Assembly (NCBI GenBank): GCA_002269645.1
Contig: NIVC01000825.1
Location: forward strand, 62,001 to 126,000
DNA length: 64,000 nucleotides
From: Macrostomum lignano
Taxonomy: Eukaryota
Reading direction: 5' to 3'
Shown: positions 31,923-40,265 of the stretch, piece by piece
Numbering within the stretch: the first letter of the stretch is position 1
Layout of the letters: every line of letters begins with the position of its first letter
The notes under the pieces: generated by a model
Database searches by the model: none
What the model was told of the DNA's origin: nothing
What the model saw: only the letters and a program-made list of their open reading frames with translations
Program-made: the position numbers and the translations under genes

Positions 31923-34900
31923 TCAATCGCGACTTAAATTAGCCACGAGCACGCCGACCAGCATCGCCACTAGAATCGAACCCCGGCTCGGCAGCAGAGT
32001 CGAACCCGCGCCCTCTCGGCATTTAAGCATTCGATAGCTTAAAAAAGGTTAAAAAAGCGGCGGCGGAAATAATTCATTTAGGCACGTGTATCTAATTAAT
32101 ACTACTAACAGTAGACTTCGATCGATAAAATATTTAATTTATCACTCACTAGTTGGTCTCGTTGCGCTGGGCTCGTTCGTACTGACTCGAGACCGTGCCG
32201 CCAGCGAAGAACCAAATGCTGATGTCGTTGTAGGGATATTCGAACCCCTGCCTGCACTCGCATTTGTAGTTCTCCAATTGGAATTTATTTTGAATGACCG
32301 GCACGCACTGTGGGACAATTTTGCGCTCTAGACTACTTATCATTGTTAACAGTAGAGCAGTGCGAGCATGAATGTTATAATTAAACAAAGGAGCAAAAAA
32401 TGCCTTATTAATGGGGCTGTCGAGTTGCGGAGCGCCGCTTTTGACACAAAACAGAACCGTCGCTCTCTCCCTGTGCACGTGTCACCTTGAGATTGAATTT
32501 TGCGACGATTCCATCAGTGCCAAGAGCGACTGTTGATCTCCGGAAAAGTTTGGCAAAAGGTAGGCCAACAGATACGCTTGGTTAAAATACTTCTACCTAC
32601 TGTGGCCTCTGTAACAGTCTTTGGAATGTAACCTACGTAGCTGCTCTCAAAATGACACGGCGCCGAGTTCTTGAAGTAATTGGCCTCGTAGAAATTCCCC
32701 GGACACTGGTTGATGTCCAGCTTGTCCAGGCGGACAGTTACGGCGGTGACGCCAAGGAACTGCAGGCTGCGCTGCTCCGAGTAGCCGAAGAACGGCGCCG
32801 CCACGGTGATCACCCAGTCGTTTACGTGCCGGCTGTTCGGGTCCCTGTTCCTGTTGCAGTCGAAGTACGGCTTGGACCAGTACATATCGGCAAATCTGGG
32901 CGCTCGATAGTACAGCGGGTACCGCTGGAACGGCTTGGACCCGGTGCCATTCAGATCCGTGCGAACGTACGGCTTGTTAACGAAAGTCTCCAAGCCGTAG
33001 GTGTTGGACGCCCAGCGCTGCTTGAGGATGCGGAACCAGTCCCTCTCGAAGTAGGCTCGCTCCAGAGGCCAGCCCGCGGCGTCCTCTGCCACGAAGCTCA
33101 GCTGGCGCTGCTTCTGGTCTCCGGTGTCGTCGCTGGCCAACTTGAATGCGGTCGGGCCGAAGTATTCGATGCGGCGCTTGAGCAGCGGGTCCCAGAATGC
33201 CTCCCGGTCGTAATAGATGCCGGCTGACCGAATCCACCCGTCTGACATGACGTTGGCGAAGGCCTCGCCAAACAGCTGGTCGCGGTTCAGGTGCTTGTCG
33301 CTATAGAACGGACCGTACACCTCGTCGGGGTTCACGTTCTGCGAGAACGCGCTCAGGAAGTGGGCGAGGCGGAGAGCACTGCGGGCCTGCACCTGCAGTG
33401 GGGAATCGGGGCGGTGGGGAGCTCAGGGCGCTGCAGGCCAACCAGACACATCCAATAGTCACCCGCGTTCAGTCCAATCCATCCAACACATCATGTCCAA
33501 CCCAACACATCCATTCCAACCCCCCGATTCCCACTCCAAAGCCACCAATCCCCACCCCAAACCCCACCAATCCCCACCCCAAGCCCACCAATCCCCACCC
33601 CAAAGCCACCAATCCCCACCCCAAAGCAACCAATCCCCACCCCAAAGCCACCAATCCCCACCCCAAACCCACCAATCCCCACCCCAAAGCCACCAATCCC
33701 CACCCCAAATCCACCAATCCCCACTCCAAAGCCACCAATCCCCACCCCAAACCCCACCAATCCCCACCCCAAAGCAACCAATCCCCACTCCAAAGCCACC
33801 AATCCCCACCCCAAACCCCACCAATCCCCACCCAAAGCCACCAATCCCCACCCCAAACCCCACCAATCCCCACCCAAAGCCACCAATCCCCACCCCAAAC
33901 CCCACCAATCCCCACCCAAGCCCACCAATCCCCACTCCAAAGCCCACCAATCCCCACCCCAAAGCCACCAATCCCCACCCCAAAGCCACCAATCCCCACC
34001 CCAAACCCACCAATCCCCACCCCAAAGCCACCAATCCCCACCCCAAACCCCACCAATCCCCACTCCAAAGCCACCAATCCCCACCCCAAACCCCACCAAT
34101 CCCCACTCCAAAGCCACCAATCCCCACTCCAACCCACCTGGAAGCTGGTGTCGGCTCCGTACCCAGCCTCGCCAGGCAGCTCAAGCTGTTGCGGAGTTTT
34201 AGCCGCGCAATTCTCTGGCGTAACGGAGGCCGTGAAGCTGATCAGCTGGGTGGCAGCCTTGAACCTGTCGGCATCGAAGGTGGCCAGCCGGCCCAGGTAG
34301 TGTACATTCTGGCCGCCCATGTCGGCAGGCGTGGAGATGCTCCTGGCTGCCCTGCTCAGCAGCCCCTTCACCAGGCTGCCCAGTCCGTAGCTCCCCGCCT
34401 TCTGCGCCCGCTTCAGCTCGCGGTCTCGCCTGTCGTGCTCGGCAACCTTGCTGCGCAGCTCTGCCATCGCGCTGGCATTGTACAGGTGCATGAGGTGCAC
34501 CAGCTCCTTGGTCTCGTCTAGCGATCGTTTCCTCCTCCGCCGCCGCTTGCTATTCGGCGTGATTCCGCGCTCCGTCAGGCGTTGCAGTTTCCATTCGACC
34601 GGGATGCACTCGAACTGGTCGGCCTCGGCCTCGGACGCCTGCTCGATGTCGCGGCCGAGGAACGGGCCGTTCTGCCAGTAGGGGTAGCGGTAGCCCGGCC
34701 GGCAGTGGCACACGTAGCCGCCCCGCTGGTAGCCGTGGCCCGGCAGCGGCTCGCACTGCATTGTCAATTATCAGTTTTTATTGCGCATTTTTTTGACAAA
34801 AAGCGTTTTTTTGCTTGTATTGCTACTTAGTTGTAAGTAGGATAAAACGAGTAGTGCGAACTTGCGAATTTCATTGTTAAAAATGCTGTAGACAGTCACG

Positions 34901-39190: not shown

Positions 39191-40265
39191 GGCTGTTGAG
39201 TTGGGTTCGAGTGTTATATAGTACATTGCTGTTAAAACTTATCTTAAATTGATCAACATGATAAAATGGACCTAAAAGTAAAAAAATTCAGACCTAAGTT
39301 TAAGAATATATGTCCTTGTTACAGTATTTACTTTTTGAGTTTTTATCTAAAAATACTAGTTGAACTGCAGTGCACGTTTTCAATGTGACCAAAACGTTTT
39401 TGATTTTTGGCATATATTATTATAATGTTTAGTCTCTAACTGTTTCTTTGTACTAATATTACTGATAACCTTTCTATTACCAAATTAATTTTAATAAAAT
39501 TTAATCTGATTGGGTCAGGAAAAAACAGGTAACATATCTGTAGCTAATTAATAAATCTATAATTAACATATGCATATGCTGGAACCAGACTAATAGTTTA
39601 CTAGAATTACAATGAGAAATATTTAAAATAAATCTATCAGAACAATAGACATCTCCATAATAGTGGCCAGATTAAATAACTACGAAAAAATAATTTGTTC
39701 ATCTAATTCTAAACAAAGAAGAGTTAAAGTCTGATACATTCGAAACAATAAAGGAAATTACATTAGTTAAATGAGTTACATTAATAAGCTGAATATATTG
39801 TGGTTGGCAGAAATTTTGCAAATTAGGCTCGTAGACGTAATTCTTCTTTAAAAAAATACAGAAGATATTTATTCATGCAGGTTAGAAATCTGAGTATTAA
39901 AAATGGAATAAAACAACCACTAACTGTTTGAAATTAATACCACCAATGAGCTACGGGAAAAAGCGGATGCACTATGCATGTCAAAATGAAACAAACATTT
40001 TTAATTGACAAAATATTCTAAACAATAAAAAACCAAAATTATTTATTTAAAAACTATTAGACAGTAAGTTTTTTTCCAAGGATGAAATTATCTGTCTACT
40101 TTAAAAATGTTTCGTGATATTGTTTGAATGTTCTAGACCATAATTATTAATAAAAATGATATTTAAACAATTGTCTAATTTAACCGCACCGCATATGCCT
40201 TAACGTGATTTGATTTAGTTGCATTCCTTTTAAACCTCAATCTAAAACAATAAATCACTTTGAAA

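What the first reader, a model, noticed from the sequence alone, without database searches (positions are those of the whole stretch)
31923..39226. GPI-anchored receptor-like protein with two GPR158-type Cache/EGF modules and no 7TM
Seen: a 7-exon ORF with a signal peptide, two complete ectodomain modules, and a last exon (32037-31923) that the ORF track misses. That exon ends ..[33 protein letters not shown]: small residues, a spacer, then a hydrophobic tail with almost no cytoplasmic sequence. Established: GPR158/GPR179 are class C GPCRs with one Cache+EGF ectodomain, and GPR158 binds glycine through its Cache domain. Inference: this is a cell-surface or shed small-molecule sensor, co-receptor or decoy with two different pockets, signalling through a partner. 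Similar two-module proteins may exist unannotated in other invertebrates, so novelty is in function rather than necessarily in sequence.
Basis: partly seen in the sequence, partly recalled or inferred. Interest (0 to 1): 0.8.

Follow-up and report, generated by a model that had tools for sequence, protein, structure and literature searches.

The report
GPI-anchored tandem GPR158-like ectodomain protein
This is a real flatworm gene for a cell-surface protein made of two copies of the ligand-binding outer part of the GPR158/GPR179 brain receptors, held to the membrane by a lipid (GPI) anchor instead of the usual seven membrane helices; it belongs to a strongly conserved but unstudied family found across protostome animals, including Drosophila.

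Summary
Window 31923-39226 (minus strand) carries a 7-exon gene with canonical GT..AG introns. Its product is identical to the annotated Macrostomum lignano hypothetical protein BOX15_Mlig029453g2 (911 aa from the second Met), including the short last exon.

The protein has:
- an N-terminal signal peptide;
- two homologous GPR158/179-type Cache + Cys-rich (EGF-like) modules, each passing Pfam PF22572 on its own;
- a disordered linker with a polybasic furin-type site (KRRRRRKR|S);
- a C-terminal small-residue cluster, spacer and 15-residue hydrophobic tail.

No 7TM sequence exists in the protein, anywhere in the 64-kb window, or in about 200 homologues. The tail pattern is conserved across Platyhelminthes, Annelida, Mollusca, Brachiopoda, Nemertea, Rotifera, Nematomorpha, Tardigrada, Crustacea and insects (Drosophila included). 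It starts right after the cysteine that in true GPR158-like receptors lies just before TM1.

AlphaFold2 gives pLDDT 83 and pTM 0.83. Foldseek hits GPR179 first, then bacterial Cache sensors.

The GPI anchor is a strong sequence prediction, not shown. Function is unknown: small-molecule sensing with two pockets is untested, and protein or proteoglycan binding is equally plausible. I found no literature on the family. It is a new architectural variant of a known receptor ectodomain, of moderate to high interest.

The parts
38603..39226 (-). Exon 1. First in-frame ATG at 39226; the annotated start is the second ATG at 39190. Encodes the signal peptide (39190-39116) and the start of module 1.
   Evidence: Donor AGG|gtgagc. 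A hydrophobic h-region is found only at the N-terminus.
37803..38176 (-). Exon 2. Module 1 Cache core, including the near-invariant T[12 protein letters not shown] signature.
   Evidence: Acceptor cccag|GTT, donor CA|gtgagt.
36003..36129 (-). Exon 3. Last Cache strand and the start of the Cys-rich region of module 1 ([19 protein letters not shown]...).
34138..34755 (-). Exon 4. EGF-like/Cys-rich part of module 1, the disordered linker, the polybasic furin-type site KRRRRRKR|S (34548-34525) and the start of module 2.
32637..33392 (-). Exon 5. Module 2 Cache domain, which carries the best match to GPR158 and GPR179.
32150..32307 (-). Exon 6. EGF-like/Cys-rich part of module 2. The donor CTA|gtgagt overlaps an in-frame TAG.
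31923..32037 (-). Exon 7. Contains the last disulfide cysteine (C880, 32021-32019). This is followed by the predicted GPI-attachment signal: small cluster EGAGS (32015-32001), spacer TLLPSRG, hydrophobic [15 protein letters not shown] (31979-31935), SRD and the stop codon.

Best explanation
Shown or strongly predicted. The locus is a real, already annotated 7-exon gene of Macrostomum lignano. It encodes a secretory-pathway glycoprotein built from a tandem duplication of the GPR158/GPR179-type ectodomain (a Cache-like domain plus a Cys-rich EGF-like domain, 8 cysteines per module). A cleavable signal peptide starts the chain. A disordered linker of about 100 residues with a polybasic proprotein-convertase site separates the two modules. 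The chain ends in a GPI-attachment-type signal placed 1-5 residues after the last structural cysteine. That is the point where homologous class C receptors continue into the CLPCxEGC stalk and TM1. It belongs to a protostome-wide, strongly constrained, functionally uncharacterised family.

Inferred mechanism. The mature protein sits on the outer leaflet as a lipid-tethered, two-lobed binding unit, possibly an intramolecular counterpart of the GPR158/179 ectodomain dimer. In spiralians it is probably cut in the linker, with the two modules staying associated non-covalently. Having no cytoplasmic part, it cannot recruit RGS7-Gbeta5 as GPR158 does. It must therefore act as a binding subunit or co-receptor for a transmembrane partner in cis, or as a surface ligand in trans. 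The membrane-distal module 1, whose Cache signature is almost invariant, is the likelier main binding site. The ligand class (small molecule or protein/proteoglycan) is open.
For: - Gene model and identity to annotated P0001.
- Both modules are PF22572.
- Both module profiles hit GPR158 and GPR179 in the PDB. Module 1 gives E 5e-12; module 2 gives E 1.8e-21 and 1e-16, plus a bacterial Cache sensor, 3lic.
- AF2 full length gives pLDDT 83 and pTM 0.83. Only the signal peptide, the linker and three short loops fall below 50.
- Foldseek finds GPR179 8irj/8d1b (E 1e-11 / 2e-8), then McpX, AHK4 and TlpA Cache/CHASE sensors.
- GPI-type tail is conserved in 199 of 223 homologues. Median tail is 27 aa, median hydrophobic core 14 aa, and the ends carry 0-7 further residues.
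- No internal hydrophobic 19-mer in 198 of 199 homologues.
- Signal peptide, linker and tail show no positional conservation, whereas the modules do.
- Three N-glycosylation sequons are kept in 67 of 67 sequences.
- Furin-type R-x-[KR]-R occurs in 50 of 50 long-linker (spiralian) members.
- Homology to 7TM relatives runs up to the Cys before their stalk and TM1.
- True relatives carry 7tm_3; this protein does not.
- The two genomic copies encode identical proteins, with 12 synonymous and 0 non-synonymous differences.
- Dipteran orthologues including Drosophila are at least 90% identical to one another, and arthropods 65-83%.
- The module 1 signature is near invariant, while the module 2 equivalent varies.
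Against: - No experiment or dedicated predictor (NetGPI/PredGPI, SignalP) was available; the GPI anchor and the signal peptide are inferred from sequence rules and conservation.
- Inter-module packing is inferred from pTM only, because no PAE or coordinates were accessible.
- Arthropod members lack the furin sites (3 of 17 have one), so cleavage is not part of the conserved core mechanism.
- Module 1 predicted alone with a 14-sequence alignment gave a poor model (pLDDT 51).
- No binding partner, ligand or expression pattern is known.
- The N-terminal half of the Cache domains does not align to GPR158 at sequence level, so the glycine-pocket residues could not be compared.
Confidence: 0.6

Rival explanations
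1. Trans-acting adhesion or matrix-binding organiser. The tethered ectodomain binds a heparan-sulfate proteoglycan or laminin-G-type protein on the apposed cell or matrix, as GPR179 binds pikachurin and GPR158 binds glypican-4. It would organise synapses or junctions rather than sense a small molecule.
For: The best structural match is GPR179, including the entry solved with pikachurin (8d1b). GPR179 does not respond to glycine and its pocket differs from that of GPR158 (PMC11437087). Conservation extends over whole surfaces of both modules, which fits protein-protein contacts. GPI anchoring is common among synaptic adhesion molecules (established knowledge).
Against: No partner is identified. 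The Cache signature (P-Y-F-D-C...W), typical of ligand-pocket strands, is near invariant in module 1, which also fits small-ligand binding.
Confidence: 0.3
2. A small-molecule (amino-acid-type) sensor with two different Cache pockets, acting as co-receptor or as a shed decoy for the ligand of the 7TM GPR158-like receptors of the same animals.
For: GPR158 uses its Cache domain for glycine and taurine (PMC12834959). Both modules are Cache-like. The modules share only 23% identity and conserve different polar residues. 7TM 'metabotropic glycine receptor-like' proteins coexist in protostomes.
Against: The pocket residues of GPR158 could not be mapped. The module 2 signature is not conserved (D in 32 of 67, K/R in 27 of 67), which argues against two conserved pockets. 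No evidence for shedding.
Confidence: 0.2
3. The C-terminal hydrophobic stretch is a type I transmembrane anchor with a minimal cytoplasmic tail, not a GPI signal.
For: A few homologues have longer hydrophobic cores (7 of 211 with 21 or more residues) and end in basic residues. AF2 draws the tail as a helix.
Against: The median hydrophobic core is 14 residues (the window protein also has 14), too short to span a bilayer. The conserved run of small residues directly upstream ([LI]-A-G-A-S-S) has no role in a TM anchor but fits omega/omega+2 rules. The tail sequence is itself unconserved.
Confidence: 0.1
4. Truncated gene model. The real transcript continues to 7TM-encoding exons, and this is an ordinary GPR158-like GPCR.
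For: Sources sometimes name family members 'G-protein coupled receptor 158'.
Against: No 7TM-like coding sequence occurs anywhere in the 64-kb window. A convergent EF-hand gene ends 1.4 kb downstream in both genomic copies. About 200 homologues, including intronless transcript contigs, end at the same place.
Confidence: 0.02

Closest known systems
GPR158 (mGlyR) and GPR179, class C orphan GPCRs
   Same: The ectodomain is homologous: Cache-like domain plus Cys-rich EGF-like domain (PF22572). These are the best sequence and fold matches. Homology runs up to the cysteine just before the stalk and TM1.
   Different: This protein has two ectodomain modules in tandem instead of one. It has no 7tm_3 domain and no cytoplasmic RGS7-binding tail, but a GPI-type C-terminal signal instead. 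It has 8 Cys per module, against 12 in the GPR179 ECD (PMC11437087). It is found in protostomes; no vertebrate member was seen.
Calcium-channel alpha2delta subunits and CACHD1
   Same: These are extracellular Cache-containing proteins without signalling domains of their own, acting as auxiliary subunits or co-receptors. Alpha2delta is proteolytically cut into two chains and GPI-anchored (established knowledge). This resembles the furin-type site plus GPI signal seen here.
   Different: No VWA/MIDAS domain is found. The Foldseek matches are not significant (E 0.13-0.63). All cysteines have intramodule equivalents, so no alpha2-delta-type interchain disulfide is expected. The resemblance is analogy, not membership.
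Bacterial and plant Cache/CHASE sensor domains (McpX 6d8v, TlpA, AHK4, 3lic)
   Same: They share the fold family. There is a Pfam MCP-like_PDC_1 match in module 2 and Foldseek and PDB-profile hits. The membrane-distal module is more conserved at the pocket signature, as in double-Cache sensors.
   Different: Here the two modules are separate single Cache + EGF units joined by a long linker, not a dCache on one long helix. The protein is eukaryotic, glycosylated, disulfide-rich and lipid-anchored.
GPI-anchored ligand-binding co-receptors such as GFRalpha (for RET)
   Same: The working principle is the same: a lipid-tethered extracellular binding subunit that needs a transmembrane partner to signal.
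   Different: There is no sequence or fold relationship. The partner here is unknown. This is functional analogy only.

Membership tests
GPR158/GPR179 class C GPCRs | Cache-like plus Cys-rich ectodomain (Pfam PF22572) | tested here: met
   Two copies, scoring 63.8 and 84.2 bits against a cut-off of 28.1. PDB profile hits to GPR158 and GPR179. Foldseek hits to GPR179.
GPR158/GPR179 class C GPCRs | Seven-transmembrane class C domain (Pfam PF00003 7tm_3) | tested here: not met
   No 7tm_3 hit at E<=1. The only hydrophobic segments are the N-terminal signal and the C-terminal tail. There are no 7TM exons in the window. Positive controls score 131-165 bits.
GPR158/GPR179 class C GPCRs | Cytoplasmic C-terminus that recruits RGS7-Gbeta5 | tested here: not met
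   The protein ends 3 residues after the hydrophobic tail. There is no cytoplasmic sequence.
Protostome two-module 'GPR158/179 extracellular domain-containing' proteins (unnamed family) | Signal peptide, two PF22572 modules with 8+8 conserved cysteines, and a length of about 790-1010 aa | tested here: met
   Full-length alignment to 66 homologues at 36-65% identity, with all 16 Cys at least 90% conserved and 14 of them invariant. Profile searches.
Protostome two-module 'GPR158/179 extracellular domain-containing' proteins (unnamed family) | C-terminal ...[LF]-x-C-R + small-residue run + spacer + short hydrophobic end | tested here: met
   The window protein ends [33 protein letters not shown]. 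The same pattern occurs in 199 of 223 homologues.
GPI-anchored proteins | N-terminal ER signal peptide | tested here: inconclusive
   MGLAR + a 13-20 residue hydrophobic stretch + a small-residue c-region. This is conserved as a property, not as a sequence, in homologues. No SignalP was available.
GPI-anchored proteins | Omega-site small residues, a 5-10 residue spacer, a 12-20 residue hydrophobic C-terminus and no cytoplasmic domain | tested here: met
   Sequence rules are met in this protein and family-wide. No NetGPI or PredGPI was available.
GPI-anchored proteins | Biochemical GPI attachment (PI-PLC release, lipid-modified C-terminus) | not testable with these tools
   This needs an experiment.
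alpha2delta / CACHD1 | VWA domain with MIDAS plus dCache_1 domains | tested here: not met
   No VWA or VGCC_alpha2 Pfam hit. Foldseek matches to 8fd7_D, 5gjv_F, 8s7c_A and 9vlg_A are not significant.

The most novel reading that the evidence does not exclude
The family is a 7TM-less, lipid-anchored version of the metabotropic glycine-receptor ectodomain. A single chain mimics the receptor's ectodomain dimer, binds a conserved small ligand (an amino acid or similar) in its near-invariant distal Cache module, and passes the signal to an unknown transmembrane partner. That would be an undescribed signalling or co-receptor system, conserved from flatworms to Drosophila and absent from vertebrates.
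Probability: 0.15. Interest if true: 0.85.

Novelty: new variant of a known kind. Interest (0 to 1): 0.55.

Why it matters
GPR158 (mGlyR) and GPR179 are the only animal receptors known to use a Cache domain in this way. They matter for mood regulation and for vision.

A sister family keeps the ectodomain, duplicates it, drops the 7TM domain for a GPI anchor, and stays under very strong constraint across protostomes. Dipteran orthologues are at least 90% identical to one another, and the two flatworm copies differ only at synonymous sites. This points to an important extracellular function that nobody has studied.

The family is present in Drosophila and in RNAi-amenable flatworms, so it is directly testable. 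It could show what the GPR158-type ectodomain does independently of G-protein and RGS signalling, and which partners it uses. Parasitic flatworms (Schistosoma, cestodes) also carry it.

Tried and rejected
- **tRNA/SINE origin of the last exon.** The GGTTCGA-like strings suggested this. It is rejected: aragorn finds nothing, the exon is unique in the window, and its peptide is conserved across phyla.
- **Downstream 7TM exons.** Rejected by ORF listing, by tblastn with five 7tm_3 domains, and by the convergent EF-hand gene.
- **Alternative exon-5 donor at 32601.** Rejected. The 32637 donor reproduces P0001 and the CxxxxxxC spacing of homologues.
- **AF2 of module 1 alone.** With a 14-sequence alignment the model was too poor (pLDDT 51) to use in Foldseek. 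Evidence that module 1 is Cache-like therefore rests on Pfam, the PDB profile search, its homology to module 2 and the confident full-length model.
- **Mapping GPR158 glycine-pocket residues.** The primary paper (PMC10751545) is not held. Other papers name only S172. The N-terminal half of the Cache domain does not align at sequence level. Not done.
- **Literature.** Searches for a GPI-anchored GPR158-like protein, the Pfam/InterPro ids, the locus tag and Drosophila orthologue names found nothing relevant.
- **D. melanogaster CG number.** It could not be determined.
- **Exon versus intron divergence between the two genomic copies.** This has low power because the copies are 97-99% identical. 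Only the 12:0 synonymous to non-synonymous count is informative.
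Full report
**1. What is in the sequence**

The window is eukaryotic DNA rich in mini- and microsatellites. On the minus strand between 39226 and 31923 I could assemble seven exons:
- 39226 (or 39190)-38603
- 38176-37803
- 36129-36003
- 34755-34138
- 33392-32637
- 32307-32150
- 32037-31923

Every intron begins with GT and ends with AG. 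The joined CDS is 2772 nt in frame.

The translation is 100% identical to P0001, the GenBank protein 'hypothetical protein BOX15_Mlig029453g2 [Macrostomum lignano]' (911 aa, starting at the second Met, 39190). The identity includes the last exon. So the gene is real and already annotated. The window is scaffold NIVC01000825.1 of assembly GCA_002269645.1.

The last exon (115 nt) is missed by a plain ORF listing because it is short. It is unique in the window and is not tRNA-derived.

The best available substitute for junction reads is P0003. This is a 61-64% identical Macrostomum protein encoded as an uninterrupted ORF on a 3-kb Logan transcript contig. It aligns collinearly to all seven exons, with residues 921 and 923 lying on either side of the 32150/32037 junction.

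**2. Anatomy of the protein (P0001 numbering)**

- Residues 1-25 form a signal-peptide-like segment.
- Residues 26-415 are module 1 and residues 520-881 are module 2.
- Each module alone passes Pfam PF22572 'GPR158/179 extracellular domain' (63.8 and 84.2 bits; cut-off 28.1).
- The two modules are homologous over about 350 residues (E 1e-14, 23% identity).
- There are 16 cysteines, 8 per module at equivalent places. Three N-glycosylation sequons are kept in 67 of 67 aligned homologues.
- The linker (416-519) is unconserved and poorly predicted. It contains KRRRRRKR|S.
- The chain ends ...LKC880[31 protein letters not shown].

**3. Structure**

AlphaFold2 with a 67-sequence alignment gives mean pLDDT 83 and pTM 0.83 for the whole 911-residue chain. 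Confidence falls below 50 only in part of the signal peptide, the linker and three short loops. A pTM this high for a two-module chain suggests a defined mutual arrangement. That is inference, because I had no PAE or coordinates.

Foldseek against the PDB returns GPR179 (8irj_A E 1.2e-11; 8d1b_A E 1.7e-8). Next come bacterial and plant Cache/CHASE sensors (McpX 6d8v, AHK4, TlpA).

Profiles of module 1 and of module 2 each hit GPR158 and GPR179 in the PDB sequence set. Module 1 gives 5e-12. Module 2 gives 1.8e-21 and 1e-16, plus a bacterial sensor, 3lic. Module 2 is the closer relative of the receptors.

**4. No 7TM**

- The protein has no 7tm_3 match and no internal hydrophobic segment.
- Five true GPR158-like receptors from the representative search served as positive controls. 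They carry 7tm_3 at 131-165 bits.
- Their 7TM regions find nothing in the 64-kb window (best E 0.38). Their ectodomains find exons 4, 5 and 6 (E down to 9e-15).
- A convergent calmodulin-like EF-hand gene ends 1.4 kb downstream, at both genomic copies.
- In the 7TM relatives the homologous segment ...Y-x-G-x-x-x-E-E-E-[YF]...[FI]-x-C continues as LPCxEGCxxC...PC and then TM1. Here the equivalent cysteine (C880) is followed at once by the small-residue cluster. The lipid-anchor signal thus replaces the stalk and 7TM domain at a precise homologous point.

**5. The tail is a family character**

Of 223 homologues fetched, 199 have C-[RK] followed by a tail with a median of 27 residues.
- Positions +2 to +6 are dominated by A, G, A, S/A, S.
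- 190 have a 12-residue window with mean hydropathy of 2.0 or more.
- Only one has an internal hydrophobic 19-mer.

In the 211 sequences of 700-1100 aa scored:
- The hydrophobic core is short: median 14, with 21 or more in only 7 sequences.
- Between 0 and 7 residues follow it.

The tail, like the signal peptide, is conserved as a property and not as a sequence. This fits the omega-site, spacer and hydrophobic-end rule for GPI attachment (established knowledge) better than a transmembrane anchor. It remains a prediction.

**6. The family**

Searches of 5.8 billion and 1.84 billion proteins, with name look-ups, place full-length two-module members in many groups:
- Platyhelminthes (Macrostomum, Schistosoma, cestodes)
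- Annelida, Mollusca, Brachiopoda, Nemertea, Rotifera and Orthonectida
- Nematomorpha and Tardigrada
- Crustacea, Collembola and most insect orders, including Anopheles, Musca and many Drosophila species (for example D. simulans GD20036)

All are labelled uncharacterized, 'GPR158/179 extracellular domain-containing', or wrongly 'GPCR 158'. I saw no deuterostome or cnidarian member among the named hits. This is not an exhaustive test.

Constraint is strong:
- Arthropod orthologues are 65-83% identical.
- Drosophila, Musca and Anastrepha fall in one 90% cluster.
- The flatworm and D. simulans proteins align end to end at 34% identity.
- M. lignano has two copies encoding identical proteins. The 12 exonic differences are all synonymous, one of them in the last exon. 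The introns carry 43 mismatches and 634 gap columns.

**7.

(a) Furin-type R-x-[KR]-R sites are present in 50 of 50 long-linker (spiralian) members, usually two per linker, but in only 3 of 17 short-linker arthropod members. Spiralian proteins are therefore probably cut into two chains. All cysteines have intramodule equivalents, so the chains would be held together, if at all, non-covalently.

(b) The Cache signature T[12 protein letters not shown] of the membrane-distal module 1 is almost invariant (Y 64/67, D 66/67, W 67/67). The equivalent in module 2 varies (Y 39/67, D 32/67, K/R 27/67). If there is a conserved pocket, it is in module 1. This argues against two equally conserved pockets.

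(c) The exon-6 donor overlaps an in-frame TAG, so intron retention would give a secreted form lacking C880 and the tail.

**8. How it most likely works**

Shown or strongly predicted: an extracellular, glycosylated, disulfide-rich, two-module Cache/EGF protein without any cytoplasmic part, tethered by a GPI-type signal.

Inferred: it is a binding subunit. It may act as a co-receptor in cis for an unknown transmembrane partner, or as a surface ligand or organiser in trans. GPR158 binds glycine and taurine through its Cache domain (PMC12834959). GPR179 binds the matrix protein pikachurin, does not respond to glycine, and has a differently shaped pocket (PMC11437087). Both ligand classes are therefore plausible.

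I rank the readings as follows:
- A generic lipid-anchored binding subunit or co-receptor with module 1 as main site: 0.6, of which the architecture is near certain and the mode of action is not.
- A trans-acting adhesion or matrix organiser: 0.3.

These three overlap. A type I membrane anchor (0.1) and a truncated GPCR model (0.02) are the structural rivals.

**9. Comparison and novelty**

The protein is a homologue of the GPR158/179 ectodomain but not a member of that receptor family, because the 7TM domain and the RGS-binding tail were tested and are absent. It resembles alpha2delta/CACHD1 only by analogy: both are Cache-containing, and alpha2delta is cleaved and GPI-anchored. It has no VWA domain and no significant fold match.

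The gene and its orthologues are in the databases, so the sequence is not new. Seven full-text literature searches found nothing on such a protein. I therefore rate it a new architectural variant of a known kind and a well-supported 'conserved unknown'. It can be tested in Drosophila and in flatworms.

Noticed in passing
window 31923-39226, and locus L001 (NIVC01000618.1) 3001-10474: The gene occurs twice in the M. lignano assembly, on two scaffolds. The proteins are identical, with 12 synonymous exonic differences. The introns differ mainly by repeat-length indels. The same EF-hand neighbour lies downstream of both copies. This is consistent with the recent genome duplication of this species.
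   Followed up: partly
window 32149-32151: The exon-6 donor CTA|GTGAGT overlaps an in-frame TAG. Retention of intron 6 would end the protein at ...NETN, giving a soluble form without the last cysteine and the anchor signal.
   Followed up: no
window 34525-34548: A polybasic KRRRRRKR|S sits in the inter-module linker. Furin-type sites are universal in spiralian family members and mostly absent in arthropods.
   Followed up: yes
window 29919-30524 (+): This is the last exon of a calmodulin-like EF-hand protein (a 163-aa product in the annotation). It is convergent with the gene, and its end lies 1.4 kb from that gene's stop codon.
   Followed up: partly
window 12703-14629 (+): A purple acid phosphatase gene (Pur_ac_phosph_N, Metallophos and Metallophos_C domains) in at least two exons.
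   Followed up: partly
window 46221-46601 (+): A small CD164/MGC-24 sialomucin-like single-pass membrane protein (Thr/Ser-rich stretch, TM segment, YKRR... tail).
   Followed up: partly
window 56838-63872 (-): Exons of a fibronectin type III repeat protein (57901-58608, 63240-63872). A possible TM segment plus Gln/His-rich cytoplasmic exon lies at 56838-57545.
   Followed up: partly
window 33470-34130, 35710-36020, 36600-37030, 37450-37800 (introns); also 4600-6000, 16600-17100, 18600-20600, 21000-22400, 22600-24400, 24900-27300, 41500-42530, 44180-45540, 55660-57000: Dense mini- and microsatellite arrays produce long spurious ORFs on both strands. ORF-based reading of this genome is unreliable in these stretches.
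   Followed up: no
module 2, P0001 residues 752-758 (window exon 5): A 7-residue insertion (RDPNSRH) sits next to the module 2 Cache signature. Among the 67 aligned homologues it is present only in the three Macrostomum sequences.
   Followed up: no
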